Below are positions 3,001 through 22,113 of a DNA stretch of 64,000 bases, in pieces. How positions within the stretch are numbered: position 1 is the first letter of the stretch; each line of letters starts with the position of its first letter. Under the pieces are notes generated by a model, which was not told the origin of the DNA, did not search any database, and saw only the letters and a list, made by a program, of their open reading frames with translations. The position numbers were made by a program, and so were the translations under genes. Source of the DNA: Ascidiella aspersa (taxonomy: Eukaryota); contig OZ004610.1 in the NCBI GenBank assembly GCA_963924565.1, positions 10,230,001 to 10,294,000 on the forward strand. Direction: 5' to 3'.

Positions 3001-6000
3001 CAGTTATTAAATCTTACAGGTGTTAAGGTGTGTTTAGTTTTCAATATAACCTCTTAGAACAGAAATTTCCTTAGCTTATTAACTTTTTTTAGATATGTAA
3101 AATTCACCGCACTCTTCCATCTGGAGGTATTTTGGTGTTTGTAACTGGAAAACAAGAAATATACGCTCTTATCAGAAAACTGAGTAATACCTTTCCATCA
3201 AAACCTGTGGAGGAACGAAAAGCAAATATGGATGACCAATCTGACAGTAATTAAATTTCTTATAAACGTTATATAAGAAACAATTGATACACTTCACATT
3301 AAAGAAAACTGTATTATATTTTTAAAATAGTTGCAAAATTTAGTGTTACTCTTGTAGTTTTTGACATGCCAAACATTGACCTCAACAAATATGCAACAAA
3401 GCCACAAGTTGAATATGAAAAGGAAGAGTACCATAGTACTAAAGAATTACAAGCTTCTGATGATGAAGGAGATTCTGATCCTGAAATTTTCCTGGTTAGT
3501 TTTGGTAGTTCTCTTTGATTTTCGCCTCATCTGCCATATTTAAATATTAACTTGTTCACCATTAACTAATATATGTACTGTTTTTTTAAGGATGACTCGA
3601 TTCAAAAGGATTTTGATTTGTCTCTACCCCTGCATATTTTACCACTGTATTCTCTACTGCCACCTAGCAAACAAAAATTAGTCTTTGATGAGCCTCCAGA
3701 GGGCTGCAGGTAATAATGGCTGCTTATAATTAGGCAAAAATATTTCACAAAACAAAATATATGTGTATCTGCAAGTAAGGTTTTGTATTTTGATGGAAAA
3801 TAGGTATACGAACATTTATCCATGAACACTGTAATCCTCATTTATACTTATGTTTGTTTTTTTATGTTCATGTTATTTTTGCAAAGGTTATGCGTTATTG
3901 CAACAAATGTTGCAGAGACTTCTCTCACAATTCCTGGAGTTAAATACGTTGTGGATTGTGGAAAAGTGAAAAAGAGAGTTTATGACAAAGTAAGTCGAAA
4001 CAGCCTTTTTAAGAAATTAAACTGTTTACGGCAAAACTATTACACGATGTTTGTGCTGTAATGAAGCATGTCGATATGTTTAAGTCACCAACCGGTGGAT
4101 GGCTTTCCAGTTGGTATACAGGTAATTTACTAAATTTATGTAGAGTCAAAGAGAATAAAAATTAAAAACAATTGTATATTAAAACTAGGCATTACGTAAT
4201 ATAGTTGCTGTTGTAAGTTGGGCTCACTTCAATATTAAATCCACCCAAAAGTTGCATCTTCTTAGGGCTGGAAACAAATAATTGCGTATTGCGTTAGTCC
4301 ACTCATCTGTATTTTAGATCAACTATTTTGAGCTAAATATATTATTCCGAAGCCAGCTATGGTAAGCAGTGGTAGAAAATTTCCACTTTGTGTGTTGTGT
4401 TGCTCAGGTTACTGGGATTTCTTCGTTCCAAGTTTCGTGGATATCAAAAGCGTCAGCCGATCAACGAGCAGGGCGTGCAGGCCGAACTGATTCTGGTCAC
4501 GCGTATCGACTTTACTCATCTGCTGTTTTTCAAGACTTCGCCGATCACGACTTGCCTGAAATAGCACAAAAACCTGTCGCTGGCCTTGTTTTGCAGGTTG
4601 AGTTCTTTTTAGTTTTGCTGGATTGCAGATCATACATTATATTTTCCTACTTTTTAGGATTGTCTGTTTTGGTTTGCCTATAAGTTTTTCAGAAACGTAT
4701 TTTTTCTTTTTTAGAAACGTATATTTATTGAATTAATGAAACAAGTGCTACTAACATTTGTTAAAAACTCCAAGTAACATACGTTTTAAAGGCGTACGTT
4801 TCCGTCTTAAAATATTGTCACTTTCCCAACAAGTTAGCGGCAATCTGTAGTATGGTAATATGTGGAGTCAATAATATTAAACAATTTACGGCGGTTACTC
4901 AGGCTCACTCATTGTCATACCTACCCTTTAAAATAAGTATATTTTAGCAGATTTTGATTTCGTTGTCTTTTAAGTAATACCAACAAAATAATATTGACAA
5001 ATGCTTTAAATTTCTGCTGTTTCTGCGCGCAGATGAAATCGATGCACATTGACCGCGTGGTGAACTTTCCTTTCCCCACGCCACCGTCACGTGACGCGCT
5101 AGAGGGCGCTGAGAATCTTCTCATTTCTCTTGGAACGATCGAACCTCCGCCGAAGAAGGCCACTCTCAAGGAAATTAAGCTAGGCACGTTACCATGATTA
5201 TAAGTTTTGAAAATCAGATACTCATTAACTCGTTCCAGTAGCCCCCTAAAAAATTGTATTATTAAAAGGCGAATGTCCTATCTGTTACCTGATGCTATTG
5301 TCAGGTAGATTTAATCAAGTTGTGTTGAGAAGATATATTGCTTTAATGTTTTTGGGAATTTTCTTCGACCCCAGGCCTTGACCTTGCCCTCTAACTTATT
5401 TTTGCCCAACTTTACCTATAATAAAATCGTTCACGCTTTGCACGAATCTTATTTTACATTCTGGTAAATTTACTTCTATTCCAATGATTTAGTTTAGCTC
5501 TTTTTCTAGACAAAACGGTCAGAGGGGCACTCCTAAAATCTTACACAACAATATTGTTGTAACTAAAACGTTCAACGTTTTGTTCTGCTGAAATTTATTT
5601 TAAGTGCTATTAAGTATTTTTTTTAACTTTCGCAGCAAAGTTCAGCGGAAAAATTACAGAACTGGGAAAGCTTGTAGCCGCCTTTCCCGTCCACCCACGC
5701 TTCGGCAAGATGATTGCTCTGGCCGTACAGAAATCACATCAGAATGACGTCATTCCCTACGTCATTACTGTTGTCGCTGCGTTGACTGTTCGGGTGCGTT
5801 TCAAATTGTGTTGTTTCGACTTTACAAAGTTTTCTTGCGGTTATAAACCGCTGTAGTGTTTTGTTTATCAATCGCCATTTTTGTTACAGGAACTCTTTGT
5901 ATCGACTTCTACCACCAGTGACTCCAACAACAACAAGGTAGGGCTTGCTGTTTCTTAAACCACAGACGATTTAATGGCAGTAACATGCAAAGAATATTAA

Positions 6001-9000
6001 AAGTCGTAATACTGGAAAAAAGTATTTTCCGAAAAGTGGCATATATAATTTTGTTTTGTCCATCTTAACAAAAAATATACATTTATTGTCATCCTCTTTA
6101 GATAGAGTATACATAAATGTCAAAAGTGTTCCCGAATGCTCCAAATGTATTTGGCCATATAAGACTGTCTATCTCAGTGGTCTCAACCTTTTTTATTTCG
6201 TGGCCCATTTACGTTGCAAAAAAATTCTGTATATGAAAGGAAAAACTGTAAAATAGGTCAAAAACCAAAAACAGCAGAACATATTTCAAAGCAGATTATT
6301 TAGTCAACCGTGCATTAGTAAGATGCTTGCGGCTGAACTATAAATATAAATTCCTTTTAAATTCCTCCCCAAGCCATTATTCCTGAAAAAAAATATAGTG
6401 ACACAAATCAAACTAAATCTAACTTTTTTAAATTGGTCTGTGGTTATGGCCCACCAATGAGCCATGGCCCACTGGTTGATAACCGCTGGTGTATCTCTTC
6501 CCATCGGTCGCGACCCATTATTGGCTCGCTGTTTAAATTGGTTGGTTTGCCGACTGCAGTAATTCTATATAGTTAGGTTTATTAAGATAGGTTTTGGGAA
6601 AGATTTCGTTAAAATAAGCAAAAATTGCGGAAGTAGATCGAGGACTTGTGTAAAATTCGAACATATTACTACTATTTTATTATGTGTTGTTAACTTACGA
6701 AACTTTAGTGTAGAGAATTGGGTCGCCAAAGCTTCGCTGTTACACTCACGTCGCCGCTAAAAATGGTTGAAAAACACTGGTATAAGAAAAATGACTTTGG
6801 GTCATCTACTTCAATTTTCGTTTTATCAATAGCAACGTCCAGCGACGTTTGTAGTTTAACTGAAGTCGTATAGTAGCTACGCACACCTTACGCATGCTTT
6901 TTCATCCACCAACAACGCTGTTCTGTTTTTGCTAGGAGGAAGTTCGTCACGTGGCCGCCCGTCTTCACCACTTGAAGGTGCTGTGGAGCACGGTGGGCGG
7001 TGGCGCGCAACGAAAGGCGTTCGGCGACCTCATGGTTTACCTGGGCGCTGTCGGTGCAGCCGAGTACAGCGGCGGTTCTGCCAGCTACTGCGCCTCCAAC
7101 TGCATAAGGTAAGCATTTCCAGCCTTAACCTGTATTTAATAGAGTATGTAGGCAAATGCGAAAGAAGCCTATCGGGCGTGCGGTTTCTTTGTGCGGTAAA
7201 CACGAGATCCTGCATTTCTCCGCTTGTGTTTGTTTGTGACATAACGCTACTTTTATGAGCAAAAAGTGCATTTTACTTAATTTGTTTCTTCACGTGGAAC
7301 ATAATGCTTCGTCATCTTGACTGTCTGTGATCTACATTGTGTAATCACAATTTTCAAAAATATGTTATTACTAATTATAAGCATGTTCAACGAATGTCCA
7401 CTTTTGCACAACATATGTACGACTTATGTGTTTCAAGCAAAGTTTTATCAGCTTAATCACTTTATGTAGACCAAAAGCATTGCTGGAAATTCGCAAACTT
7501 CGATCCCAGCTAACCAACACCCTGAATTGCGCAATGCCGGAGTGTGACTGCTGCATGGATCCCAAGATGTCACCGCCGAGTGAAGATCAGGTACTTAAAA
7601 CACAAATCACACTGACAAGGAGTTCGCGTGCCTACGGAAAACGTTTTGCTGAGTCAGTTGGCTTAATTAGAAATGTAGTACAACGCCCTAGTCTGAAGTA
7701 CAAAATGCAGTAGGTAGACTATCGTCGTTTCTCAACCAGCTCCACTAAGTCTGTAGAGCATCGGTCACGGTGTGGTCGATGTCGTGATTTCGAAACTCAC
7801 TGCTTTTTATTTGTTTCATGCTCACAAGTTTATTTGTTTCTTACACTACAGTCCTGTTTAGGCCAACCTATTTTGGAAATTGATTCTCCCAAGGCACCCA
7901 GTGAATTATTTTGTGTATGTCGTAATTGTTGGTCAGCACTACTTCTACAGGACTCAATAACCATATTTATCACGTGGATTTCATGGCTTAGTTGTTAGTT
8001 TATATGTAACATCTTAGAAATGTATTCACTGAATATTATTCAGTGTAAAGTTGCTCTGGTTTCATGGTTTCTTTAACATAAAGTGGTGCAACACGTAGTA
8101 CGTTAGTTAGTTCTGGGAATACAAAAATAAGTGTTTTTACTATCTTATTAATTTTGAATGTTTTTTAACTCAGCGTGAAATACTTTCGTTGCACAATACA
8201 TGAGCTGTTTAAACGCCAGTACGTCATGTATTGGTTCCCCGAACGAAACCCAATCCAGGTTGTGCTTTATAGTGAAAACGTGTCGCCTCGTGCTAGTGCA
8301 TTTCTTGCGCACTTAAACCTTATTACTGCCAATTTGTCAGATCAAGTTGCTGCGTCAAATTGTCCTTTCCGCGCTTGGAGATCAAGTCGCTCGACTCTTG
8401 CCAAAGGAAAGTCTTCCCGTCGAACAAGCGAAGCAGATGAAGGGCGCGTATCAATGGTCGGTTGCAATTTTTTTTATTATCTATTGTCATGAGCCTTTTA
8501 TGTACTAAACTATTTATAGCTGCAAAGCTACTTCTCTAATGCCCCATAATAAGGTAGGAACAAACCTAACAAATTTAACTCCACTCTAGATGACTTTTAG
8601 TTTATTCACGTTATTCACCACCACTTGTGTTTTACCGTTATATAATACCTACTAACCTACTTACATAACACAATTAATGACTTATAAATCGCAATTTCAT
8701 GAATTTAATTTTGTCTATGTCAGCAGTGAAGATAGTGAAACACATGCTCCTATTTAAATCCCAATCGTAATCTTTGTTATTGTAGCCTCCTATCGGACGA
8801 ACCCGTGTTCATTCATCCGGAATCGGTGCTGTCACGTGACCCTCTGCCCGCCTTCGTCACTTTCCACGAAATTGTTAAAACAGAATCGACTAAGAAACGA
8901 GCGTACATGCGAGGTATAAAACTAAACAAATATCGACTTCTCGCCAACAGTATGTATTTTTACTTGCTCAATATTGATCGTTTTTAGTACTTACCAATTG

Positions 9001-12000
9001 CATCTAGTGAAAATGCAAATGGGTAAATAAAGCCAATCTATAACAAAGCTACCCGATCTGTTGGAAACACAGTTTGGGGACGGTGACAAAATAACAAACA
9101 ACACTACGCTACGATGTTTCGACCTCCAACCTAAATATATTTTCACTTTACGAAGTAGCGATCTTTTGATTGTTCATTCACGTTACTGCTAGTATTTCTT
9201 GTCATCAATAAAGTTAATGCTTTGATATAATACTTAAGTCGAAATTAAAAGAATTATTTTTGATTGGTTTGTGTCCAAAATTGCGGCAGACAAGAATTCC
9301 TGTGAACACTCTATATCTATTGACAAATAACGAGATCGCGGCCAAATACTAAATTGAAGTCGTAAAAATCTTAATTTTAAACCAAATTTTGTTATTCAAG
9401 TAATGCCGCTGATTACCCAGCTGTGATCTATTTTCAACAAGTACACCGAAAGCCTTTGCAGACTCACCGAATCTGTTGATCTATGATGCAAGCAGAGCAG
9501 ACTAGAAAAACAACTAGCCTGCAGTGAGGTTCGAACTCACGACCTCCGGTCAAGCCGGGACCGTCGCTCTACCAACTGAGCTATGCAGGCTCAGAAGGGA
9601 ACGAGTCGAGAAACAACCATGCGCCAATGCTGGCTCAATCTGTTAGTACAAGCAACCTCATTGAAGGGGATCCACAGTACCATATCATTTGTTCAATGAA
9701 ACATTCACAGATAATGTGTGTTAATAACTGAGATCTAGCCCTTCGAAGCTGCTATGGTACTGTGGATACACTATTTTCAACAACTGATCATTTTTCAGAC
9801 GTAACCGAAATCGAGTCGACCTGGCTCGCAACCCTATGTCCGCAGTACTGTTCCTTCTCCAATCCTCTCGCGTCGCCCGAACCTTTTTACAACCCCTCAA
9901 CCGATGACGTCATGTGCCACGTCACGGCGACGTACGGGCGGCTGGCTTGGAAACTTGGCGAGGTGGAAGTTGCTTATCCCCCAGGGTTGGATCGGTAAGT
10001 GAGACGTTTGCATCTCAGGCCAAAGAAACTCGCTTTGCTTTTTGAACCTTGCTTTTGAGTATATAAAGTCTTACAGATGAAATGCATTTCAATCCTTAAG
10101 AAACTTATCGCACAACGCGTAAGCGACTCGAAATTGTTCGTGTGAAGGCAATTTTGAAATTTCTGGCCATTTCTCGTCGGTTTAATTTAAATTTTCCTTA
10201 CTTATGTTCCCTAGTTTTTTTATTGTATTAATCGGAATTAAACCTACTGTTTCCATGTCACTTTTTTAAACATATTTTATTTTCTTCTATAGGTGGTGGA
10301 TACTTAAAAATGAAACTATTGCGTTTTTTAAGGTCTCTTTCATTAGATAAACAGATCATTCTGAATCATCTCATGTTTGTTTAGATTTCGTTGGTTTGCG
10401 CGATTTCTACTTGAGGGAAAAGTGTCTAAGCAGCTGGAACGTTTTGTCTCCTCTCTACTTTCACGGCCAGCTACCATGGTGAAGTCATGGGCCAAGTAGG
10501 TGCTTTTATTTGTTGATCATCGTCGCTATTTTACCCTCACAATTTATCATAAACACTTCCTAAAAATCTAAATGTCTTTGTTAAACTATTGTTGTTTTTA
10601 ACCGGTAGAATTTAGTTTTGTTTTAATAAATAGTCAGTAAATGTTTATGTAAAGAGTAAATAACATTCAAATGTAAACCGAATGCCTTCAGAAAGTCAAT
10701 TACCGAAACCAGTTGGCCTAATCAGATTTGTATTGCAAGTAAAGCAAAGCAAGATTAGGAAACACCATGCTCGTAAACAGAATTAGATTGAAATATATAC
10801 TTAAGTGAATTCCATGACCAAGTTACATTGGAATGTAATAATATTTAATTACAAAATGTATATACAGCAATACATAGTAAGAGAAAGTTAACTACTTTTA
10901 GTTTCTAATAAAAAATAATAATACCACCAAAATATATTCTTGACAAGATTGTTTTAAAAGTGGCAACCAAACAAATGAACGTATTTTTGCAAATCAACAA
11001 ACTTTCTTGTCAATTTACAGTTTGCAACCACGCACTGAAGTAATGCTTCTGGGTCTACGCAACAAGAACGTTGATTCCAAACAAAAGTTGATCAGCGTTT
11101 GGAAGACTGAGCCATCCTGTAAGTCATCGTGCCCTAAAGCAGTGATTCTCAACCTTTTATGGTTTATGGCACCCCTCAATAATAATTAATATTTTTTCGG
11201 CACTCCGACTGAAATTTTCGTTGAGTATTTTACTGAAATGTCACTATAAATGGGACTGAATCAACACAATTAACGTAAAACATGTAGGTAATGTCATTTG
11301 ATATAATGGTCTCTAATCGTACACAAATAGTTATATCAAGAAGCTTATTAATGGAGCAGAAATCAGATTCCTGAAAATTCTCAAATACCTATCCGCACCC
11401 TTAAGCATTAGAAATGGCTCCTCGGCACCACGATTGAAAACCTCTGATCTAAAGGATAAAACTAGTTAATACCAGTGTCGAATGTATTAGAATTCTGGCG
11501 ACTTTTACAAAATAAATAACAGTCCTACCGAAGTATCTAACATTAAAAAATAGTGCCGAGATTTGAGCAACGTTTTACAAGGTTTATCTTTAACTGTTTA
11601 AATTAGTAACAGTAGAAACCCTTGTGTGTTAAGTTGTTTATTTTTATTTGTTCAGTAAACCTTGGTTATGAATGAAAATATGAGGTCTATTTCTCCCCCA
11701 ACATACAAAATGAGGTCATCTGTTTACCACATTCTCCCTTTGTTAGGGTTGTTGCCGCAGCATAAATAAGTACTGCTTCATTTATAGATTTATAGAAGAC
11801 CATTTCTCCCCGTTAATTGGCATTCAATTTAAAACCGCAGGGCTTTTTATCTCTGTCCTGCAAAGGAGCGTTGGCGTAAATAGAACGCTTTGTTTTCACC
11901 AACGCAGGGCTTTTTTATATATGTCCTGCAAAGGAGCGTTGGCGTAAATAGAACGCTTTGTTTTCACTAATTGACCTTTTGCTATATTGAAGTCTTGTTT

Positions 12001-12214
12001 TTGTTCCTGGCGATCTGTCAAGCAAAACTAAAATCCAACCGACTGTCCTCATAATTTCGCACCTTATTTGTATGCATTATGCATAACAGTGTGTGACCCC
12101 ACCTGCCCACCTTATTTGGGACTTTAAATTGCAGATTTGCGTTCGGCCTATCTCCAGTGGTTGCCTAATTCGATTCACGAAAAGGCGACTGCAATTTGGC
12201 CACCCTCCGACTGA
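58..12214 (+). CDS. DHX37: DEAH-box RNA helicase DHX37 (Dhr1 orthologue), multi-exon, complete
   Basis: ATG at 58 gives MGRSRRKY...[22 protein letters not shown]|RSELLSRL, a DHX37-type N-terminus. Helicase motifs lie in successive GT-AG exons: GETGSGKT (~1556-1579), [17 protein letters not shown] (~2220-2245), [25 protein letters not shown] (~4462), then VNFPFPTPP and FIHPESVL. The last exon 12135-12214 ([26 protein letters not shown]) resembles the DHX37 C-terminus and is phase-compatible with the exon ending at ~11118. Confidence 0.93.
1830..2000. mobile_element. Fold-back (palindromic) MITE-like repeat, copy A, in a DHX37 intron
   Basis: 43-bp inverted repeat at 1830-1872 / 1926-1968 (one mismatch), followed by the tail TACATTACAGATCCGTGCATAGTGTACC. 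Homologous to 29552-29752. Confidence 0.8.
6165..6779. mobile_element. Nested hAT-type MITEs (outer 6165-6779, inner 6175-6488)
   Basis: Inner element: CAGTGGTCTCAACC...GGTTGATAACCGCTG with TSD GTCTATCT/GTGTATCT. Outer element ends GGTTGAAAAACACTG, has TSD ATATAAGA/GTATAAGA and an internal GGTCGCGACCC like the element at 51106-51418. Confidence 0.75.
9439..9660 (-). mobile_element. Dispersed repeat with internal tRNA-like core (core 9517-9590), copy 1
   Basis: The minus strand reads GCCTGCA TAGCTCAGTTGGTAGAGC ... GTGAGTTCGAACCTCAC TGCAGGC (A/B boxes; acceptor, D and T stems), followed by a T5 run. The anticodon arm is non-canonical. Flanks are homologous to copies at ~49525 and ~62965. Confidence 0.8.
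11140..11446. mobile_element. hAT-type MITE
   Basis: CAGTGATTCTCAACC...GATTGAAAACCTCTG with degenerate TSD CCCTAAAG/ATCTAAAG. The interior (AAATCAGATTC..AGCATTAGAAAT) is shared with 52849-53156. Confidence 0.7.
11836..11968. repeat. Tandem duplication of about 65 bp in the last DHX37 intron
   Basis: CGCAGGGCTTTTT..TGTCCTGCAAAGGAGCGTTGGCGTAAATAGAACGCTTTGTTTTCAC occurs at 11836-11899 and 11903-11968. Confidence 0.9.
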
Positions 12215-13133
12215 CAACGGACGACCTTTGAAACATGTAGCAGGGAATCGACGAACGGCGTGCTTGTGATGTTCTAGGACGCCTTGCAAGCGGGCCTGGA
12301 CTGTTACAAATCGCATTTCATGACTGTCGAAATGCAAAAGCCGCACTTAGCGGCGTCCGGGATTTGCTTTTGCGGAAGCCTGAAACCAAATCGTATTAAT
12401 ATTGGTGTTAAATGCGGCATAAATAACCAGTTTGGTGAATTGCATAGGCATATTTTGTGCAAATGATCTCTAAACTTAGTCAGACAATATAAAGTACATT
12501 TTTCGCACAGTTACTTTGTAGCCCGCTGTAGCCAAAACGGTTAGAGACGTAAAAATATGATATTTTACTCATTTGTACCTCATTGGTTAAAATCGAAATA
12601 AACCATTACATGTGAATGCAAACTATTTTTGTGGCTGTTCTGTTGTTAGCTTGAACTACAAGTCGTCTCAATTCTAGAAAATTACAATTATCCAAACATT
12701 TTGTATTTTGTAAATGGGCGGAGCACTACTACAAGAATCTTTGAGCTTAAACAGGATTTTTGAAAGAAAACCTACAAATTGACACGTAAAGCAAGTGTTT
12801 AAATTTAGATTTTGAGAAGATAGTTGAGATATAATTTACTTTATGGACAACTCAAGTTGATGAAATTGAGGTAAAAGTGCAACACAATAATTTACGCAGA
12901 CAGAGAACTCGTTGTTTTACTACTATATAACTTTACGGTCGAAAATTTATCTATTTGAGAATTGAAAAGGTCAACGGTAATAGTACTTCTTCCATGAACC
13001 ATATAACAGAACTTTCAGGAAACATAGACTTCGCATGTATGGTGCTAGACACCACCAGTACAGGCGGCAACATTTCTGCGGAACTCACGTAGCGCAAGAC
13101 TGGTAAGAAAAAGTGCAAAATGGCAGAAGTTGT

Positions 13134-16100
13134 TTAAAACGGTTCCTGCGAACTTGTGACCGAGGTAATGTCGGGGTTCTCATTTTCCTCGACGATGACG
13201 CTCTCCCTGCGCGTGACGGCATACGCCCCCGAACTGCTGACGCCCTCGAAACGTTTTCGCTTCTCCAACGCGTTCTGCCATTTCCAGGCGTGTTGTCTTT
13301 GACAGGACGGATCGGCACTTGCCTGATAAATTGGCGGCTCCACACTGCGATGAATTTGAATACATTTTGAAACGCAAGAAGCTTTATTATATAAGGCACT
13401 TGTACCCAAATGCGAAGGAACAGATCAAAGTTTATTTTTGCCGTCTGTTGTTGCCACTCGCAGTAAAGTTTGTCGTTTTGTTGCTACAAAAATTAGTATG
13501 GAAAACAACCGTAGGACGATTTCTGTCACAACTTCAAATTTATGGCGGTTAAGTTAAGCGCAATAATTGAATAATCGTGTGTTCTTTTTCACAGTAAACT
13601 AAACATAACAGGTGTGTCCCCAGATGTCCCAACGGTTGTAGTTTTATAATATATCCCCACGCACTTAAGGTTTTCAAATGATATTGCTATTCAAAGTTTT
13701 AGCAGCACACAACTGGTTTCGTCGCGCGTTTGATCTTTCTAAACCCGAAAAAAACGATTTGTCACTTTCACACAAGTGCAACGGTTTACTGAGTTTGACG
13801 ACGTGCCCTTTAACCGCTAAGTGTTGCGCTGCATAAGATTTTACTGTTTGTTTTGAGTTGTGCATAATCATTAGCATTTCGAAGCGAACAATAAAAAAGT
13901 TCAATAATACGAAAATCGTAACTTATTTAGTAGCAATGAAAATCTTAAAAAAGGTAATTACAGCACCTAGCAATTCCATAATGTAACCCTTTACTAGCTA
14001 AGGATTGTGAAAAGTATGGTACGGTAGTAAAGATCACCTAGTTAAATAAACGGATTTTTATGAGCCTTTGTTATGACATGTCGACTTAAAAGTTTGTCGT
14101 GTGGCTCTTGTTCTAAATCGAGTAAGCAGTCAAAACTTGCAGTCTATAGTACTGCAAATTAAAAATTGATACAATACCTAGAAAGCAACAGTATATAACT
14201 TCTATTAATTTGGTCTACATAAAACGACAATCTTGGTTCACTATTATCCTTGTTAATTGCTTAAACATGGCGTGCCAAAAACTCATAGGAATTTGGGCCC
14301 AAAATACTTTGTAATTTCAGCTTTGGCAAGAATCAAAATCCGGGATATCAGGCGGTTTAGCGTCATTGCTGCTTTTCAGTATGAATCCCACTTAAGTTTC
14401 ACCTGTTACATTGTATCTCCCGAAAGGTGTAGGTGTCCATCGATTCTTTCTCATAAAGCTCCCGGTGCGAGTACATGTGCTTGAGCTCCCACGCCGAAAG
14501 GCCGCTCGTAATCTGCGTGACAAATCCGAAAGCTTGATAAAACACCACACTTCACCAGCTTACTTGGAGAAGGGTTTACGCGCCGTCTTACAACCACTAT
14601 ATTATTATCCTCGTACACACCAATTTTGTTGTTTCTTACAAGTATTTCACACAACCAAGAAACAAGTGATACAATATTCCACCAAAAGATGACGTCATAA
14701 AGTTTCGGCAGAAAAAAAGACAAATTTTGGCAAAGATTGCATTTTGGAGAAAGTCAAGTGAGGAAAATATTCTAATCTTTATACAACCGATATATTCTCA
14801 CAATTATATTTAGTTTTAAATGCACGACGCCTTTGGCTTAAATCTCTAAAAACACGCGCCCTAAAGTTTGGCAAGATTCTTGCGAGCGCGACAAAAATGC
14901 TTTTGTGTTGTTCAAATGGATAAAAAAATAGTTGGGGTGAGCCATGGCTTATGCTCTCCCTCCTGAATCCGCCCCTGACACCAAGCTATATGAGCAAACC
15001 TAAACATTTTAGCACAAAATGTTTTAAATAATAACTATAGAAATGTCCTATGATATCGAAACCGTGCCGATTACCGATGCCAAGTGGTAGTTCGCTACTT
15101 GTTCGAACCAGGCTGATATTTTACCCAAGGAAGGTTATTGAAATACAGCAGGTACAACCGGCGGTAACCAAAATTTTTGGACTCTAAAGCAAAATGTCGC
15201 CTAATAACCTTTAAAAAAGTCATCTAAATGTGGATACAGGGTACCATGCCATGCTTCCCCATTTAAATATACTATATTTAGTGTATTTTTTTACGTAAAA
15301 GCAAACAAATCGAATTACATAAATGCAAAACGTTTTTGCGCTTTGTGGAAACTTTGTTTGGGTTTTGCAATGTTCTTGTCTCTGTGTTAGGCAAATCTAA
15401 TGAGCAAAAAAGCGCTATATATACCATGGCCTGCTGCGCTATGCGACTTATAACCTTCGCAAACAATTTCCATTCATTGTAAAATTATTCTCCCGGCAAT
15501 ATATATATATAACTATATATTTTTATTACAAAGAACAATTTTACAATTGATACAATACCTAGAAGCAACAGTATATAACTTCTATTAATTTGGTCTACAT
15601 AAAACGACAATCTTGGTTCACTATTATCCTTGTTAATGTCTTAAACATGGCGTGCCAAAAACTCATAGGAATTTGGGCCCAAAATGCTTGTACCCGAAGA
15701 CTGGCGAGATTCTGTCAGCCTGGTTTAAAATTTACGCGCTTTTCATAGATGAATCAATCTATGTTGGCCTGCATGGCTTTTGTTGGACCGGCCTCAAGCA
15801 CTAATAATTAACCATCGGAGTGCCGATTTTCGGTAACGACCTTATCAGACGTACGCTAATATTGTTGTTCTTACCAAGTTAATGGCGCTGAAGAGCCACA
15901 GGAAACACGTCTTTTCGGCGCTTTCCATCAGAATACATGATATCGCTTCATCATAGCACCGAACGAACATGGGCACGTACATTCGGTATGCAACCACTAT
16001 GGTAACAAAAGTCACCAATTCGAGGCACAATCTGCGCAAAAATTATTTCATTTATAATTTTGATTTGTTTTGTTTTCCTTGTTTTTCCAGGACCGTTTGT

Positions 16101-19100
16101 CCAGTAGGCCTACCGCGATTTGTTTCTGATGTTTAATGATATAGATTGGTAACGTTATCTGAGGCAGGAGCATTAACCTAACACAACCTTCGTAAGATTA
16201 TTATACACACAATTCCGGTGTGTGCTTTTGATTTGGTTAAATACCGAATTTTAAAAAGTTATGTTTTATTATGAAGATCCATAGCACGAATGGTCAACGT
16301 GCATTCTGCTTTTTGTATTTTTGTTAAGTTTGATTTTGTCTGCTTATGTTGTTAACCAATATTGCCGGTTTCGACTCGAATCCTATCGCTTTTTTGTAGA
16401 ATAAGGTCAATAGAGTTGATAAGCTCCGCGAACATAATAGCATTCATATAAACTGTTGCTACCAGGCATGGTAATATAAATCAAAAACAGCTCCTCTGGT
16501 AATTTTTAATTCTATACCAACGTTTTTTTTATAATAGCATTTATTTAGCAATTCGCGTTTATACTTAATATTGTTAGGGTGCAACACTCACTTTTAATCT
16601 AACTAACAAGTGTATGAAATTGAACTACAAATAGCGAATTTAAATTTCTACCCATGTGTAGGCCTAATGTGTGGCCCCGTGAACAAAGTAAGAAATACGG
16701 CCTTTGGTCTCTGAATGGAAGACCTTCCCCGATCTATATAATACATAAATAAACTATACTTGCCGCATTATAGCTCTAATAGCGGACGACAGGTACACCG
16801 TAAGGCACGGCCAAGTGCAGCCATGCATTGGACAGGCAATGTAATCCTGGCCGATCTCGAACGGCGTCCAGGGCATTACGATTAACCACGGAACGACAGC
16901 CGTGAAGATGCTGAGTACCCAAGCAATCAGGGGCGATATGTTTCCGTTGTACGCCACTCTGTAGAAACGAAAACGATTATGCTAGACCGCGCATCATGTA
17001 TAAACAACCTACATTTACAAGCTACTGAAAATTTAATTAAAACAATCAAGTGGTGTCAATAACGCTATTGATCACCAGACAAGATAGATTTACTCAATGG
17101 TGGTTGCAATTTAGTATATGGAAAAATAAATTTTAAATATGTAGGTAGTTTGCGCAAACCACGTGAGCAATACTGGTGACACTTTTAAGAAAAAACATTC
17201 TTTGCAAAGTTTCCAATATACCGTAAACATGTCGATTGCACCTCGTTCCAGTTGATATCTTCGGTTTCGTTTTCTGACCTAAAAAGTTCCGTAAATAGTT
17301 TAGAACAGAATGCACTTAGGCCTACGCTTAAATTCTACCATTAGAATAAACTAAACAAAATATTTTTTTTCACAAACAAAATCTTATTTTGTTTGTTGTT
17401 TGTGATTTTGCTATTAAATGTCCAAGCTTTATACCTTTGATAAATTGGCTACAGAGTGTTACAAAACACAAAACACTTCTTTGAAAACTTAGGAAAGTTA
17501 TGGTATAATAACCGTAATGAAAGTAATACCGAATTGATCGAATTGCAGCTTGAACACTTACTCGTTTAGCGGCCAAAGAATTGTTCCGTTGACGCCAATT
17601 GTAAAATTGCACTGGATACTTTGTACGTCGTTGGCAAATAATCTTCCCGCAAGTGCTCCGGTTATAATAACCCGAACGATAACGTATACCTGAAGTTGAA
17701 CGATCGACTTTTAATATTATTGTCTTGTAAACTTTATCCGCTTTTCGTCTGTTACTGAAGAAAATTGTCAAAGGTGAAAAAAACGAACTGTGGGCGCACA
17801 AAATGTGGGTAAGCAAGTTTTTTGCACACTGTCATATTTTGTTTGTCAAAACTGAACAGTTCGAAAATCCAAACATATAAAATAAAACGTGATCATCATA
17901 TGTACCGAAGGGGTTGAGTATTACTGGGATTAACAGTAAAGTCTCTGGAGAATTTTCCAGGCTGCGAGTAAAGGTTTTGTGCCATAAAAGCTGTTCTTTC
18001 AAGCATGCCTTTTGTACGTCAGATGATAATCAGTCTGGCCATGCTGGTTATCCAACCGCGTCGTGCATTATTAATTAAAAACAACGTCTAAAACGAAATG
18101 ACCACTCTCGCATGTTAAAAATTCATGTCTAATCTTCTAAACGTGGTGCTAATATCTGAATATATTGCCCTTGAGCATTTTTATTATACCCATAGACATT
18201 TGAAGGGGAGTTCGTTGGCCTATAAACCGGTTATATTTTACGGAGGTATTATTACGTTGGCATTTGAACGAACGAAAACGTTTTTCTTCGTCCTACTATT
18301 CGGGCTTTTTGCTTCGTGGCGGTATCGTCTAATGGAGGAGGCGTTGAAAATGCTAATACACTTTTCGTGTCATCCGCCACCGCACGCGCAGTGATGTCTG
18401 TCGCGCGCATGATCTGGCTTGTTTGTACAACACTAATTTACATTTCGCTTGATACACTTAGGCGAGGTGTTTAGGGATATTTTGTTTTCAGTCGTTTCAA
18501 AAATGTTTGTTTAAATAAAACAAAAGCAATTTACAGATAAGGTATTTGATTTTCGTCGACGTTTTTAATCTAACGTATGTTTGGCAAACGTTCCCTTGCC
18601 TTTTATTGTTCAACTCGGCTATCATCGACATGTACGGCTTTTGTTTTGGTCTTATAATGCACATTTTCGCAAATATGCGAAACTAAATACTTCGATCACA
18701 GTTTGTCATCGTGTATATGTTATCATTACGCATACCTAACCAACAACAACTACGCCATACCATAAACTGGGTGTAGCCGACCAAATGGCAGAGACTGAAC
18801 ATTCCGTTGACCAAAAAGTTGTTGACCAACACACGAAGAACGATGTCGACAACACTGTTGTTTTCTTCTTCTTCGAGGTCAGCAGCTAACTTTCCTAACG
18901 GTTTTTGACATTTAGTTTCTGTGCAAAAAAAAAGATTTAATCTTACGCCGTGTGATCGATCAGCAACTGCGCAACATGTTGCCTTTGGGGAAACATTTAT
19001 CTGACTGGCGAGTCGCTTATTTGATTTCTGCAACACTCCATTTTACATTTAACCACGGAATCTATTTATAACTTTGCTTTTGTACCATTCGATTAAAAAT

Positions 19101-22100
19101 ATAAAAACAAGTAAAATCTATTTGGTATAGTAAACAGTTAAACGTTTATTCAGACCGCTTTTAAACGAGTAGTTGTTACACAAAGTACACCACAAGATTT
19201 TTTTTGCAAGCTTATTTTGTCTTGACTGCGACGCAAAAAAATATTATCATTTGATAAAGAAGAGAATAGTAGGGAACGGAACATCGATCAAATTTATTTT
19301 TTAAACACGCTCTTTAGAAATGACCGTTGTATATTAAATGGTAATGTTGACCGCTTATTCATAACAAGCGCCTTACATATAAAAATACTTTTGGATGCCT
19401 AATTTTAAAAAAAATAAATAACCTAGTCGTTTTTGTATTCGCTAATAATTTCACCGGTGACTGGTCTGTTGCTTGGGATCTAACTAAAATAATCTCTGCA
19501 CCTTCGCTTGGACTTTTCAATGGCTAAACGTAAACCGTCCGAATACGTTTGCCCTTCACGTCGTTTATGCGTTCTGTACAAACATTTTTCGCGTTTCTGC
19601 TGTTGCGTATACGCCACGGTTTCAACTGTTATCGAAACTACTCTTTGTCTCTTCGCGACTTAATGCCGTGTCACCGTTTAGGTACAACTTATGGAATACA
19701 ACCAACGGTTCGGAGAAAAACAAGGCAACGGCAAAATGAATCATTACGGAATGCCCCTAATCTCAAAACGCATTGTTCTACAGTATAAACCGACAAAGCC
19801 ACACCAGAAAAAAAACATTTTCCACTGAAGAACGGGAAATCAGTCGATGTATATAAGCTTCTGGCGCTAAACCAACCGACCACTTTTCAATACCAAATCA
19901 GTGAAAAGCGTGACGAGCGCTCGTTCGTCCTTCGGAATTCTCCATGTGCCAAATTACGTCAATGAAGAATTTTTTATCCCCACTTGTCCAATTTGCCGCG
20001 ATTCTTGAGAATTCCGGTGCGACTTTACAATGTTTTCTGCTGTTTCGTCACACTCCGAATGCGCCGTTACGTCAGCGATGCCCGTCAAACCGAGCTAATC
20101 CCACTTTGCTTGAGCCCCTTGCGGTTTCACGGAGAAACGCGTTTCATTCTTGCTGCTCTAAGTGTTTTTCACACTAGTTTTGTAACTGGAATCTTAATAG
20201 TGAACCATTAACTTTGGAAAACAATTCACGTTTTTTTAGTAATTTCAATAAAAACATTAAAGCCATAGTATTCTATAAAATCGACTCACAGACGTTTCAG
20301 CAATACCTCACGCCATCATCAGTGTGAACCATTAAATCCGTTAAAACATTATAAATGTTTCTTCTTTATAACAAAAAGCAGCAATGAAATGCGTCTTTTA
20401 CCAGTCAGCTTTTTGATTAAAAAAATCTGACTTTAAAAAAAATAAATCTGACTGAATCGAGTTGAAAACATAACCTTTACTGAAGAGACTATTTGTCTGC
20501 GTAAGCAATGATCAGACTTGGTAGTAAACTAGTGCCATGTAATTGAACACAAACAGTTGCTATATAAGTGTTTGGGACCACACAGTGCTGCAATGTGCCC
20601 TTATCTTTTTAAGCCCTTGAGGAAAGATTACTGCGATATGTGATCCTGGGCGCTTCCCAATAAGTTCGCGTTGTTTCTTGTAAAGTTTTGCGTAGTGCTG
20701 TGCGAGAATCCGTCTTACACAAACTCTGGCTGATAAACAAATGTCGCCGCTGTCTATTACCTAACCCTAAAACTACGCAAGTGGGCAGGACCTTTTTAAA
20801 CACGACCCGTGACAAGGGTCGCTTTGAGTGACAAGCATGTATATATACAGGGTAAAGCATGTCTAAACTTCCGTGTCGCAGGAGCGACTCTTTTTAATTT
20901 CAACACAAAAACATTCCGGTTTCAGTGGAGTACTGTGAAAAACTTTTTCTCTAAAAGTGGTTTTGTTGTAAGCCTTATCCCCCGAAGTATTTTATAAGTG
21001 AGATTGATTCCCAATTATTGTCGGTCAAATTGGCGTGTATACGTACGGGTAATGCGAAACCGCGCTAGTCCATAGGGATTTGACATGTTGCATTTAAGTT
21101 AATTGCTGCTTATCGACAGTGATACAGCCACAAGCCACCTCGTTTTTTTAAGCAATGTCGCTTCCATCCGATCTACTAGCTAGTGGCTGTCCAGAGCTTT
21201 TAACCAGTAGGACACCTATTTGTTTAAAACGTTACATTTTTTCTGTTTTGTTAAATTTAAACATTATAAAACGTTAGTTTAAGAAACCGTTTGTCCTAAG
21301 CCTATAATATGCATTTTACTAAATCAGTAGGCCTACCGGTTGGTTCACTTGTCGATTTGAAACCTTTTTGATAGTTATTTCTTCACGATTTACTATAAAT
21401 TATACCCAAACCTGTTTTCGCATGTTAGCATTTACTATCTTTAAGAATACCATCTTTATTTTTTTACCGAAACAATTTTTGTATCTTTAAAAACAAAAAA
21501 CAAAAACATTTGTAAAAATATTTACTTTTCAGTTTTGAGCATAATATCCGCAATTAAAATTATTAGTTTAGCAGAATTACGTTGCCTAGTTTTGGGAAAT
21601 TCTTACGGTTTGCATAGGCAAATGACGCGTTTTTGAAAAAACAATTTTTGAAATGTTTTATTTCGCTGTCATTTTACTGTCAACATACTGATGAATATTT
21701 GCGGTTTCTTAAATTTTCAAGTTTGTGTTAAGTGCGTTTTGCTTTCTTCTAAAAAGTTACTATTTTTTTTAAAGGAGATCACGTTCTTATGCCCAATGGT
21801 AGGCAATATTTCGGTTGAATCGATACGTGAAGCTTTATCATTTTGGGGAAAAAGCATTCCGTATTTTGGTAAATGAGACAAAAAAATTTTTATTTTTAGC
21901 AGTATTTCGTCGTCTATCTCTTTTGCCTAAGTTTTGATAATTTCGTTAATGCAAATGACCAAATACTTGAATTGCACGATATTTACCTGCATCAGTTTCG
22001 TTATGTGTTTTCTGTTCACATCTTTGTGGTTTTTCTTCCGAAGTTCGGCCTCTCCCGCCCATTTCCGTTAGGTTGTGTGTGGTGGAGGATTTCTTAGTCG

Positions 22101-22113
22101 ATGTAAATCCCAT
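13134..22113 (-). CDS. Divergent connexin-like (gap-junction family) protein, 8 exons, about 380 aa, four extracellular Cys
   Basis: Hand-assembled exons (-): 22113-21987, 18918-18761, 17689-17562, 17278-17222, 16958-16764, 16031-15875, 14512-14403, 13344-13134. All phases are compatible, total 1143 nt, six GT-AG introns and one GC-AG. The translation shows connexin landmarks in order: CHLVGYTQFMVYVIVRVIITGALAGRLFANDVQSIQCN (cf. STxxGKxWLxVLFIFRILxLGxAxExVWGDEQSxFxCNT), TCLRVAYNGNISPLIAWVLSIFTAVVPWL (cf. CYDxxFPISHxRxWVLQIIxVSTPxL), TVYLSS..RLCLE (TM3 Y..RxxxE) and RC..SCILMESAEKTCFLWLFSAINLITSGLSAWELKHM (cf. CxISRPTEKTxFxxFMxxxxxxxxxLNxxELxHL). Exon 1 is the least certain. Confidence 0.82.
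14164..15685. repeat. About 140-bp near-identical direct repeat (14164-14305 and 15545-15685) flanking connexin exon 7
   Basis: AATTGATACAATACCTAG...ACTCATAGGAATTTGGGCCCAAAAT is present twice, differing by one indel and two substitutions. Confidence 0.92.
16032..16763 (-). other. Non-canonical GC-AG intron (connexin intron 5)
   Basis: Donor ATGCG|GCAAGT and acceptor TTTTTGCGCAG|ATTG. Only this junction keeps the TM3 R-x-x-x-E motif in frame. Confidence 0.75.

What the first reader, a model, noticed from the sequence alone, without database searches (positions are those of the whole stretch)
13134..22113. Hidden 8-exon connexin rebuilt like a pannexin: four extracellular Cys and a glycosylatable loop-1 insertion (candidate non-docking hemichannel)
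Seen: eight phase-compatible exons encode a roughly 380-aa, 4-TM protein with connexin landmarks. EL1 has C-x32-C (QCNFTIGVNGTILWPLNESENETEDINWNEVQSTC) and EL2 has C-x6-C (RCYDEAISC). Established: canonical connexins have C-x6-C-x3-C and C-x4/5-C-x5-C and unglycosylated loops that dock. Cx23/GJE1 is the known four-Cys exception, and pannexins carry N-glycans thought to hinder docking. Here the middle Cys of both loops is lost in a coordinated way, EL2 is about 4-5 aa shorter, and EL1 gains about 22 acidic residues with four N-x-S/T sequons. Inference: a connexin that converged on single-membrane (hemichannel) function, possibly an undescribed tunicate subfamily. The ORF track alone does not reveal this gene.
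Basis: partly seen in the sequence, partly recalled or inferred. Interest (0 to 1): 0.9.

Follow-up and report, generated by a model that had tools for sequence, protein, structure and literature searches.

The report
Divergent four-cysteine, sequon-rich ascidian connexin gene
The window holds a real, single-copy, eight-exon gene for a very divergent connexin conserved across sea squirts, whose outer loops (one disulphide pair gone, a long sugar-site-rich insertion, docking residues changed) suggest a channel that opens to the outside instead of coupling two cells; that function is untested.

Summary
On the minus strand, eight phase-compatible exons (22113 to 13134) give 1143 nt, or 380 codons. 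Loop 1 has C-x32-C with four N-x-S/T sequons, and loop 2 has C-x6-C.

Exons 2-7 match the uncharacterised proteins Ciona LOC100176175, Phallusia CAB3260896 and Clavelina LOC143449040. All six core intron positions and phases match Clavelina. The convergent DHX37 neighbour is also shared, and the gene is single-copy in this genome.

Connexin kinship is real but remote:
- Pfam Connexin scores 33.8 bits for the Phallusia orthologue, against a cut-off of 31.3. The window's loop-2 exon alone scores only 14.4 bits.
- All 26 PDB profile hits are connexins.
- Structure searches put connexins on top (Z 14-16).

All four species carry 2-5 sequons in loop 1. Eight canonical tunicate connexins carry none.

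Exon 1, the GC donor of exon 5 and expression are unverified, because the one RNA run showed no exon reads. The hemichannel reading is plausible: the equivalents of docking residues N54 and D179 are not kept. It remains inference. The Cys pattern equals that of Cx23, and zebrafish Cx23 still docks, so an ancestral state cannot be told from convergence.

The family is annotated but undescribed in the literature I could search. The scan's earlier notes hold nothing on it.

The parts
21987..22113 (-). Exon 1 (ATG at 22113; 127 nt, ends in phase 1; donor CAG|GTAAAT). Proposed N-terminal cytoplasmic extension. Unverified.
   Evidence: Phase fits exon 2. It is the best-scoring phase-1 donor and the longest ORF among eight candidates within 7 kb upstream. 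No similarity to P0001 and no RNA reads (one search did not cover this stretch).
18761..18918 (-). Exon 2: end of the cytoplasmic N-terminal region, a helix-like NNFLVNG segment and the conserved GYTQFM motif at the start of TM1. Donor ATG|GTATGG, phase 0.
   Evidence: tblastn to P0001 E 2e-7 and to P0010 E 9e-7. Profile A1 hit E 6.5e-8. The intron falls after 'QFM', as in Clavelina.
17562..17689 (-). Exon 3: TM1, the GRLFAND para-helix equivalent, the first loop-1 Cys (17611-17609) and sequons NFT and NGT. Donor GA|GTAAGT, phase 2.
   Evidence: tblastn E 1.3e-8 to P0001. Same intron phase as Clavelina. In alignment A3, Cys1 and the TM1 Arg line up with canonical tunicate connexins.
17222..17278 (-). 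Exon 4: 57-nt mini-exon holding the acidic second half of the loop-1 insertion (sequon NET; NES spans the exon 3/4 junction) and the second loop-1 Cys (17229-17227) within S-T-C-L. Phase 2 in and out, so skipping it would keep the frame but remove that Cys.
   Evidence: It encodes the family-invariant C-(L/I)-R motif together with the split Arg codon. Clavelina has a mini-exon ending at the same codon position and phase.
16764..16958 (-). Exon 5: end of loop 1, TM2 and a short cytoplasmic loop with a C-x4-C-x3-C / WPC motif. Ends with the GC donor CG|GCAAGT, phase 2.
   Evidence: This is the best exon match: tblastn E 1e-29 with 63% identity to P0001, and profile hit E 4.8e-25. Only the GC donor gives the conserved ...RAIM-R-L... 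reading; the GT 4 nt downstream shifts the frame. Clavelina's intron has the same position and phase, with a GT donor.
15875..16031 (-). Exon 6: TM3, loop 2 with C-x6-C (Cys codons 15958-15956 and 15937-15935), the S-x-EKT motif and the first half of TM4. Donor TTG|GTAAGA, phase 0.
   Evidence: Pfam Connexin E 0.033, 14.4 bits, profile positions 153-211. phmmer E 2e-15 to P0001. tblastn E 1.4e-18.
14403..14512 (-). Exon 7: second half of TM4 and the proximal cytoplasmic tail (GLSAWE...REIQCN). Donor AG|GTGAAA, phase 2.
   Evidence: tblastn E 2e-11 to P0001. Profile hit E 8.3e-5.
13134..13344 (-). Exon 8: variable C-terminal tail ending in E-P-F, plus the stop codon (13136-13134).
   Evidence: The phase closes the frame at 380 codons. 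The terminal acidic-x-F ending resembles the orthologues' (DPF, DVF). There is no significant sequence match otherwise.

Best explanation
Window 13134-22113 (minus strand) holds the single-copy orthologue of Ciona LOC100176175, Phallusia CAB3260896 and Clavelina LOC143449040. This is an ascidian-conserved, highly divergent branch of the connexin superfamily.

Shown here:
- A 4-TM protein with a connexin-like fold.
- Its two outer loops keep only the first and last cysteine of each canonical triplet. By the Cx26 disulphide map (my knowledge, Maeda 2009), that leaves two of the three inter-loop disulphides.
- Loop 1 carries a 20-37-residue, length-variable, acidic insertion between those cysteines, with 2-5 N-x-S/T sequons in every species.
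- Loop 2 is 4 residues shorter than in vertebrate connexins.
- The cytoplasmic loop is only about 25 residues and has a conserved Cys motif.
- TM1 is preceded by a variable N-terminal extension, not a terminal pore helix.

Inferred: the subunits oligomerise like connexins, loop 1 is N-glycosylated in the ER, and the glycans plus the altered docking positions stop head-to-head docking. The docking positions are the equivalents of Cx26 N54, which is not conserved, and D179, which is T or S. The protein would then work as an unpaired plasma-membrane channel (a 'hemichannel'), as pannexins, Cx31.3 and mouse Cx23 do.
For: Gene reality and orthology:
- Intact 380-codon frame with proper splice signals.
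- Exon-wise matches to orthologues.
- Six of six core intron positions and phases are identical to Clavelina.
- DHX37 lies convergent next to the gene in both genomes.
- Only one locus in G000.

Connexin kinship:
- Pfam PF00029 scores 33.8, 30.5 and 26.6 bits for P0001, P0004 and P0003, against a cut-off of 31.3.
- A profile of the family hits only connexins in the PDB (26 of 26, best Cx36 at 3e-5). That alignment places a 4-residue gap over the middle loop-2 Cys.
- ESM Atlas nearest clusters are connexins, at 0.91-0.93.
- A family-only AF2 model gives 50 of 50 top Foldseek hits as connexins.
- The deeper-MSA model gives connexins at Z 13.8-16.0, against LRRC8 at 11.7, pannexins at 10 and innexin at 9.6.

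Non-docking:
- Sequon density in loop 1 is 5-9% against 0.3-0.8% elsewhere. Shuffle P values are 0.0037, 0.0002, 0.098 and 0.14, which combine by Fisher's method (my arithmetic) to about 1e-5.
- No sequons occur in loops 1 and 2 of the eight canonical tunicate connexins examined, seven of which had a readable loop 1.
- The residue before the last loop-2 Cys is T in three species and S here. This is the same class of change (D179T) blamed for Cx31.3 not docking, along with N54H (PMC7455182).
- Larger, elaborate loops go with absent coupling in cnidarian connexin-like channels (bioRxiv 10.64898/2026.06.13.731801).
Against: - No experiment or RNA evidence supports this. The one RNA run showed zero exon coverage in the roughly 6% of reads sampled.
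- Glycosylation is only predicted from sequons, and their positions are not conserved.
- Four Cys is compatible with docking in zebrafish Cx23 (PMC4729916).
- The N-terminal half matches connexin profiles only weakly (4.5 bits). hhalign to one tunicate connexin clade gives only 68% probability.
- The second AF2 model used canonical connexins in its alignment, so it is not an independent test.
- The homo-oligomer prediction gave no verdict.
- The lack of a free N-terminal helix and the very short cytoplasmic loop might mean it no longer gates or conducts like a connexin.
Confidence: 0.55

Rival explanations
1. It is a connexin-fold membrane protein that no longer forms a conducting pore. It could instead be an auxiliary, adhesion or scaffolding subunit, or an intracellular-membrane protein. 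In that case the loop-1 glycans serve folding or recognition, not anti-docking.
For: - TM1 is preceded by a variable extension of 8 to about 90 residues instead of a terminal pore-lining helix.
- The cytoplasmic loop is cut to about 25 residues and has an invariant Cys...WPC motif absent from canonical connexins.
- The position I align by eye to Cx26 E42 is an invariant Arg.
- The oligomer prediction gave no verdict.
- No reads in the RNA run.
Against: - The TM1-TM4 core and the loop-2 hairpin are the best-conserved parts and superpose on channel-forming connexins.
- The D/E of the para-helix and the S-x-EKT motif are kept.
- Connexin-like domains fused to other domains still form channels, although those fusions are C-terminal to the connexin domain, not N-terminal extensions as here (bioRxiv 10.64898/2026.06.13.731801).
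Confidence: 0.22
2. It still makes gap junctions, homotypic or with a canonical tunicate connexin. The loop-1 insertion would fold aside, and the sequons would be unused or compatible with docking.
For: - Zebrafish Cx23, with the same four-Cys pattern, forms gap junctions and hemichannels (PMC4729916).
- Canonical tunicate connexins of this genome already have a long loop 2 (C-x9-C-x13/14-C) and are presumably junctional, so loop length alone is tolerated.
Against: - Sequon enrichment recurs in all four lineages while the insertion's length (30-47 residues between the Cys) and sequence drift. That is unlike a precise docking surface.
- The N54 and D179 equivalents are not kept (PMC7455182).
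- Glycans on the outer loops block junction formation in pannexins and innexins (PMC8769644).
Confidence: 0.15
3. The locus is a decaying pseudogene or a false gene model built from chance open segments.
For: - No RNA reads on any exon in the run sampled.
- One non-canonical GC donor is needed.
- Exon 1 is unsupported.
Against: - No stop or frameshift across seven conserved exons, with consensus splice signals.
- 41-71% identity to the Clavelina protein exon by exon, with all family-invariant residues present.
- Conserved intron positions and synteny.
- GC-AG introns with the GCAAGT consensus are a normal minor class (my knowledge).
Confidence: 0.03

Closest known systems
Ciona intestinalis LOC100176175 (XP_002124331 and isoforms), Phallusia mammillata CAB3260896.1, Clavelina lepadiformis LOC143449040. 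All are database entries named 'uncharacterized protein'. UniProt auto-labels one as 'Connexin cysteine-rich domain-containing protein'.
   Same: These are orthologues. They share the motifs (GYTQFM, GRLF-x2-D, C-L/I-R, ISPL, WPC, MY-V/I-P, C-Y-x5-C, S-x-EKT), the two Cys per loop, the sequon-rich loop-1 insertion, the intron positions and the DHX37 neighbour.
   Different: Core exons are 40-63% identical by tblastn. The loop-1 insertion has a different length and sequence. The N- and C-terminal tails are unrelated, and the window has the GC donor. No paper in the searchable library mentions the locus.
Vertebrate connexin 23 (GJE1, epsilon subfamily)
   Same: It is the only known chordate connexin group that lacks the second Cys of each outer loop (PMC4729916). 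It is a very divergent long-branch connexin (PMC7914757). Mouse Cx23 is cited as non-junctional (bioRxiv 10.64898/2026.06.13.731801).
   Different: No loop-1 insertion or sequon cluster is known to me for Cx23. Zebrafish Cx23 does form junctions. GJE1 was not found in cyclostomes (PMC7914757). Orthology could not be tested because no GJE1 sequence was reachable with these tools.
Canonical connexins (Pfam PF00029; solved Cx26, Cx32, Cx36, Cx43, Cx46/50)
   Same: Shared 4-TM fold with a loop-2 beta-hairpin (Z 13.8-16, rmsd 2.6-4.7 A over 160-187 residues). The TM1 Arg, the para-helix acidic residue, the first loop-1 Cys and the EKT motif after loop 2 all align.
   Different: Two Cys per loop instead of three. 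Loop 1 is +22 residues with sequons, and loop 2 is -4 residues. The cytoplasmic loop is about 25 residues against 60-100 in the tunicate connexins aligned. There is no terminal M-x-W N-helix. The HMM score sits only at the Pfam threshold.
Cx31.3/GJC3 (Cx29), a hemichannel-only connexin
   Same: The docking positions are changed. Cx31.3 has H54 and T179 (PMC7455182), and this family has T or S at the D179-equivalent and a variable residue at the N54-equivalent. Structural match Z 14.1.
   Different: Cx31.3 keeps six Cys, has normal loop lengths and has no sequon cluster.
Pannexins and glycosylated innexins
   Same: A working analogy only: a large-pore 4-TM channel with two Cys per loop, whose outer-loop N-glycans prevent junction formation (PMC8769644).
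   Different: Not homologous by sequence: there is no Pfam Innexin or Pannexin hit. The structural matches are clearly weaker (Z 9.6-10.2 against 14-16).
Invertebrate connexin-like (CxL) domains of anthozoan and protostome NLRs (Butler et al. 2026 preprint)
   Same: Two Cys per outer loop, and larger, elaborate loops linked to hemichannel-only behaviour in the cnidarian members tested (bioRxiv 10.64898/2026.06.13.731801).
   Different: CxL domains are mostly single-exon and fused to NLR or immune domains. This gene is stand-alone, multi-exon and chordate. The relationship was not tested.

Membership tests
Connexin (Pfam PF00029) | HMM score at or above the curated gathering score (31.3 bits) | tested here: inconclusive
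   Window exons were searched one by one. Only exon 6 matches, at 14.4 bits and E 0.033, and the genome-wide scan misses the locus. Full-length orthologues score 33.8 bits (P0001, passes), 30.5 (P0004) and 26.6 (P0003), all on profile positions 147-224 only. The joined window protein was not searched, by rule.
Connexin (Pfam PF00029) | Four-helix transmembrane fold with a loop-2 beta-hairpin, as in solved connexins | tested here: met
   Tested on orthologues. The family-only AF2 model (pLDDT 41.8) gives 50 of 50 top Foldseek hits as connexins, with TM(target) about 0.5. The model with the deeper alignment (pLDDT 62.6, core 75-87) gives connexins at Z 13.8-16.0, clear of LRRC8 at 11.7 and pannexin at 10. 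The second model's alignment contained connexins.
Connexin (Pfam PF00029) | Three Cys in each outer loop (C-x6-C-x3-C and C-x4/5-C-x5-C) | tested here: not met
   The window has C-x32-C and C-x6-C. The orthologues have C-x30/33/47-C and C-x6-C. The rule already has one accepted exception, Cx23 (PMC4729916), so this does not exclude superfamily membership.
Connexin (Pfam PF00029) | Short N-terminal helix starting at Met1, about 20 residues before TM1 | tested here: not met
   The model has about 90 residues before TM1 (exon 1 is unverified). Orthologues have from 8 (Clavelina as annotated) to about 90 residues, and none has the M-x-W...ST-x-G-K pattern of the canonical tunicate connexins.
Connexin (Pfam PF00029) | Hexameric assembly around a pore | tested here: inconclusive
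   A four-copy prediction of the Clavelina core gave 'no answer', score 0.00. The tool does not offer a hexamer.
Gap-junction-forming connexins (functional class) | Docking residues equivalent to Cx26 N54 and D179, and unglycosylated loops | tested here: not met
   The residue after the first loop-1 Cys is N here (but as part of the NFT sequon), T in Ciona, D in Phallusia and S in Clavelina. The residue before the last loop-2 Cys is S here and T in the other three. There are 2-5 sequons in loop 1. The role of these residues is taken from PMC7455182.
GJE1 / connexin 23 (epsilon subfamily) | Loss of the second Cys of both loops | tested here: met
   In loop 2 the retained Cys align to canonical Cys1 and Cys3, with the gap falling over Cys2. 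In loop 1 the first Cys aligns exactly. The second lies 9 residues before the I-S-P motif, between the canonical Cys3 (+7) and Cys2 (+11), so its identity as Cys3 rests on the partner logic. The Cx23 pattern is taken from PMC4729916.
GJE1 / connexin 23 (epsilon subfamily) | Groups with GJE1 in a phylogeny of connexins | not testable with these tools
Pannexin / innexin (PF00876) | HMM match, or best structural match, to innexin or pannexin | tested here: not met
   No Pfam hit other than Connexin. Pannexin and innexin chains score Z 9.6-10.2, below all eight connexin representatives.

The most novel reading that the evidence does not exclude
The LOC100176175 family is the first naturally N-glycosylated connexin lineage. 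It is the tunicate counterpart of the two-Cys-per-loop connexins (vertebrate GJE1/Cx23 and the invertebrate connexin-like domains). On this reading it is a dedicated non-junctional connexin channel that predates vertebrates, which would support the idea that hemichannel function is ancestral in the superfamily.
Probability: 0.2. Interest if true: 0.75.

Novelty: new variant of a known kind. Interest (0 to 1): 0.55.

Why it matters
Connexins are usually described as unglycosylated and pannexins as glycoproteins (my knowledge). In pannexins and other chordate innexin homologues the outer-loop glycans are held to be what stops docking (PMC8769644).

A conserved chordate connexin lineage with a sequon-rich loop 1 and only two inter-loop disulphides would be a natural experiment on three questions:
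- what makes a connexin junctional;
- whether glycan-blocked, single-membrane channels arose independently in both large-pore families;
- whether the two-Cys state of Cx23 and of cnidarian connexin-like domains is ancestral, a question raised by a 2026 preprint.

The orthologue exists in Ciona, where knock-out and expression mapping are routine, so the idea is directly testable.

On the practical side, this family is missed by exon-level Pfam scans and sits at the Pfam threshold even at full length. Tunicate connexin counts may therefore have left it out.

Tried and rejected
1. RNA support. The only RNA run of the species (X3) was laid on 13100-19099. Exon depth was zero. The only reads sat on a roughly 55-nt repeat at 16446-16504 in intron 5, with loose ends on both sides. 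About 6% of the run was read, so this is neither support nor refutation.

2. An extra exon between exons 5 and 6. The open segment at 16355-16480 offers no phase-compatible junction, and the orthologues join ...RAI(T/M)-R-L... directly. Rejected.

3. Start codons inside or just upstream of exon 2 (ATG at 18996, 18977 and 18911). All run into stops or have the wrong phase.

4. Similarity of exon 1 to the Phallusia N-terminus: none.

5. More orthologues or GJE1. The full HMMER scan of 1.84 billion representatives with exon 6 found only four relatives. Word-indexed searches with P0001 and with the family profile found the same three species. A search with a canonical connexin of this genome returned six tunicate connexins and no GJE1.

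6. hhalign of the family against eight tunicate connexins gave only 68% probability, on TM3-loop2-TM4.

7. The first AF2 model was of low confidence (pLDDT 41.8).

8. The homo-oligomer prediction (four copies of the Clavelina core) returned 'no answer', score 0.00, and the tool ignored the alignment. It is not evidence either way.

9. Pannexin/innexin, LRRC8 or another 4-TM family as the true home was rejected.

10. All window searches were exon by exon by reference, and full-length tests used the orthologues as proxies.

Full report
**What is in the sequence**

The window is eukaryotic DNA, about 38% G+C. It lies at C4:10230001-10294000 of a 308.6-Mb, 75-contig genome that carries many multi-exon connexin genes. 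That is a tunicate-type genome.

Reading the DNA and checking by script gives eight exons:

| Exon | Coordinates (minus strand) |
|---|---|
| 1 | 22113-21987 |
| 2 | 18918-18761 |
| 3 | 17689-17562 |
| 4 | 17278-17222 |
| 5 | 16958-16764 |
| 6 | 16031-15875 |
| 7 | 14512-14403 |
| 8 | 13344-13134 (stop included) |

- The total is 1143 nt, or 380 codons.
- All acceptors are AG behind pyrimidine tracts.
- Donors are GT, except exon 5, which needs GCAAGT.
- The five split codons read E, E, R, R and S.

Window searches were made exon by exon by reference, and full-length tests used orthologous proteins.

**It is a real, conserved gene**

A HMMER scan of 1.84 billion representative proteins with exon 6 alone found a small family:
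- P0001 at E 2e-15 and 58% identity;
- P0003 and P0004;
- a fragment, P0002.

These are Phallusia mammillata CAB3260896.1, Clavelina lepadiformis LOC143449040 and Ciona intestinalis LOC100176175. All are named 'uncharacterized protein', and one UniProt copy is auto-labelled 'Connexin cysteine-rich domain-containing protein'.

tblastn of these proteins on the window hits exons 2, 3, 5, 6 and 7, at E-values from 2e-7 to 1e-29 and 56-63% identity to Phallusia. Adding the exon peptides to the family alignment as fragments places exons 2-7 in order. All family-invariant residues are present.

Exon 4 is too variable for BLAST. It does encode the invariant C-(L/I)-R motif, with the R completed by the split codon.

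Gene structure and neighbourhood agree with Clavelina:
- In the Clavelina locus (L025) the six introns of the conserved core fall at the same codon positions and phases as in the window. This includes the mini-exon and the intron where the window uses the GC donor.
- The neighbouring gene is DHX37 in both genomes, tail to tail with the connexin-like gene.
- The family profile finds only this one locus in the whole genome.

This excludes a chance ORF mosaic and makes a pseudogene very unlikely.

**What is not verified**
- Exon 1 rests on phase compatibility alone. It has the best donor and the longest ORF among eight candidates in 7 kb, and shows no similarity to the Phallusia N-terminus.
- The one RNA-seq run of the species gave no reads on any exon between 13100 and 19099. 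About 6% of the run was read, and only a short intronic repeat was covered. No junction, the GC donor included, has transcript support here.

**Is it a connexin?**

By sequence it is only just a connexin.
- Exon by exon, only exon 6 touches Pfam Connexin (14.4 bits, E 0.033).
- The genome-wide PF00029 scan reports 58 exon hits elsewhere and misses this locus.
- The full-length orthologues score 33.8, 30.5 and 26.6 bits against a cut-off of 31.3, always on the TM3-loop2-TM4 part.
- A profile of the family searched against all PDB sequences returns 26 hits, all connexins, with Cx36 best at 3e-5.
- hhalign against one tunicate connexin clade gives 68% probability.
- The ESM Atlas places the Phallusia protein next to connexin clusters (0.91-0.93). 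Its own structure model matches connexins first.

Structure predictions agree.
- An AF2 model built from the family alone is poor (pLDDT 41.8). Its 50 best Foldseek matches in the PDB are still all connexins.
- A second model of the Clavelina protein used a 21-row alignment that included canonical tunicate connexins, so it is not independent. It reaches pLDDT 75-87 in the membrane core.
- An exhaustive structural search with that model puts eight connexin representatives on top (Z 13.8-16.0, rmsd 2.6-4.7 A over 160-187 residues). LRRC8 follows at 11.7, pannexins at 10.0-10.2 and innexin at 9.6.

I conclude it is a divergent member of the connexin superfamily, not a pannexin or another 4-TM family.

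**The unusual features**

Alignment with eight canonical tunicate connexins, two of them from this genome, and with Cx36 shows the following.

*Loop 1.* The first Cys, the TM1 Arg and the acidic para-helix residue line up with the canonical ones.
- Between the two retained Cys there are 32 residues here, and 30, 33 and 47 in the orthologues. The canonical figure is 10.
- The second Cys lies 9 residues before the I-S-P motif. That is between the canonical third Cys (+7) and second Cys (+11), so its identity as 'Cys3' is not fixed by spacing.

*Loop 2.* The two Cys align to the canonical first and third. A 4-residue gap falls over the middle one.
- By the Cx26 disulphide map (C53-C180, C60-C174, C64-C169; my knowledge, Maeda et al. 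2009), the retained loop-2 Cys pair with loop-1 Cys1 and Cys3.
- The simplest reading is therefore loss of the middle disulphide.

*Sequons.*
- Loop 1 holds 4 here, 5 in Ciona, 2 in Phallusia and 2 in Clavelina.
- Density is 5-9% in the loop, against 0.3-0.8% in the rest of each protein.
- Shuffles that keep each loop's composition give P = 0.0037, 0.0002, 0.098 and 0.14. Combined by Fisher's method (my arithmetic) this is about 1e-5.
- The canonical tunicate connexins have none in either loop.

*Docking positions.* The residue before the last loop-2 Cys is S here and T in the three orthologues. This position is D179 in Cx26. The residue after the first loop-1 Cys (N54 in Cx26) is not conserved. 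N54H and D179T are the changes held responsible for Cx31.3 being hemichannel-only (PMC7455182).

- The cytoplasmic loop is only about 25 residues and has an invariant Cys...W-P-C motif.
- There is no terminal M-x-W N-helix. Instead, a variable extension precedes TM1.

**Most likely mechanism**

Shown: a connexin-fold 4-TM protein with two inter-loop Cys pairs and a variable, acidic, sequon-rich excursion on the face that normally docks.

Inferred:
- The subunits oligomerise like connexins.
- Loop 1 is N-glycosylated.
- The glycans, the loss of the N54 and D179 equivalents and the shortened loop 2 prevent head-to-head docking.
- The protein therefore acts as an unpaired large-pore channel.

Close analogies are pannexins (PMC8769644), Cx31.3 (PMC7455182), mouse Cx23 and the cnidarian connexin-like channels. 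In the last, larger loops go with absent coupling (bioRxiv 10.64898/2026.06.13.731801).

I put this reading at about 0.55. The rivals are:
- a non-conducting connexin-fold protein (0.22), favoured by the missing terminal helix and the cut-down cytoplasmic loop;
- a protein that still forms junctions (0.15), since zebrafish Cx23 does so with four Cys;
- an artefact or pseudogene (0.03).

A four-copy complex prediction returned no verdict and counts for nothing.

**Comparison with what is known, and novelty**

- The gene is not new to databases, because its orthologues are predicted proteins. I found no paper naming the locus.
- The connexin-evolution papers I could read describe no tunicate connexin with four outer-loop Cys or with glycosylation sites (PMC7914757, PMC8769644 and the 2026 preprint).
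The same two-Cys state occurs in GJE1 and in anthozoan connexin-like domains, so it may be inherited.
- I could not test this because no GJE1 sequence was reachable.

I rate it a new variant of a known kind, at moderate interest. It is a well-supported, conserved and odd connexin lineage with a testable hypothesis, but with no functional or transcript evidence yet.

The scan's earlier notes contain nothing on this locus. The only nearby note concerns a DUOX intron.

Noticed in passing
window 486-12208 (+): More than twenty tblastx blocks collinear with the Clavelina DHX37-type DEAH helicase gene (DEAD, Helicase_C, HA2, OB_NTP_bind and DHX37_C domains). Its 3' end faces the 3' end of the connexin-like gene, the same convergent arrangement as in Clavelina.
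   Followed up: partly
window 14183-14309 and 15563-15689: A 127-nt direct repeat, 98% identical, with one copy in intron 7 and one in intron 6. It is probably a young interspersed element, and it creates the look-alike short ORFs seen in both introns.
   Followed up: partly
window 16446-16504 (intron 5): The only RNA-seq reads laid on the 6-kb stretch pile up here (depth about 9 on each strand), with unlike sequence on both sides. This looks like a short piece of a repeat that is transcribed elsewhere, not expression of this gene.
   Followed up: no
window 16800-16830 (exon 5); orthologues P0001, P0006, P0010: The short cytoplasmic loop carries a conserved Cys motif. It is C-x4-C-x3-C here and in Phallusia, and the first and last Cys plus W-P are invariant in all species. 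It could be a metal, lipidation or redox site, and canonical connexins have no counterpart.
   Followed up: no
window 13137-13145; C-termini of P0001, P0006, P0010: All family members end in an acidic residue, then P or V, then F (EPF, DPF, DVF-V, EVF-YE), although the tails are otherwise unrelated. This may be a trafficking or binding motif.
   Followed up: no
L001 and L002 (G000:C3:22031012-22034154): Two tandem single-exon canonical connexin genes (322 and 484 aa). They have the normal C-x6-C-x3-C in loop 1 but a long loop 2 (C-x9-C-x13/14-C), a form shared with the Ciona and Clavelina connexins found.
   Followed up: partly
L025:10790-10835 (Clavelina): Isoforms X1 and X2 of the Clavelina orthologue differ by 12 nt (R-C-I-D) through two alternative acceptors. 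These lie at the intron that corresponds to the window's GC-donor intron.
   Followed up: partly
L025:9955-10000 (Clavelina): Upstream of the annotated Clavelina start codon the frame stays open for 14 codons. It reads a sequence resembling the NNF-x-x-NG helix segment of the other species before hitting a stop. The annotated N-terminus may therefore be truncated, or an upstream exon missed.
   Followed up: no
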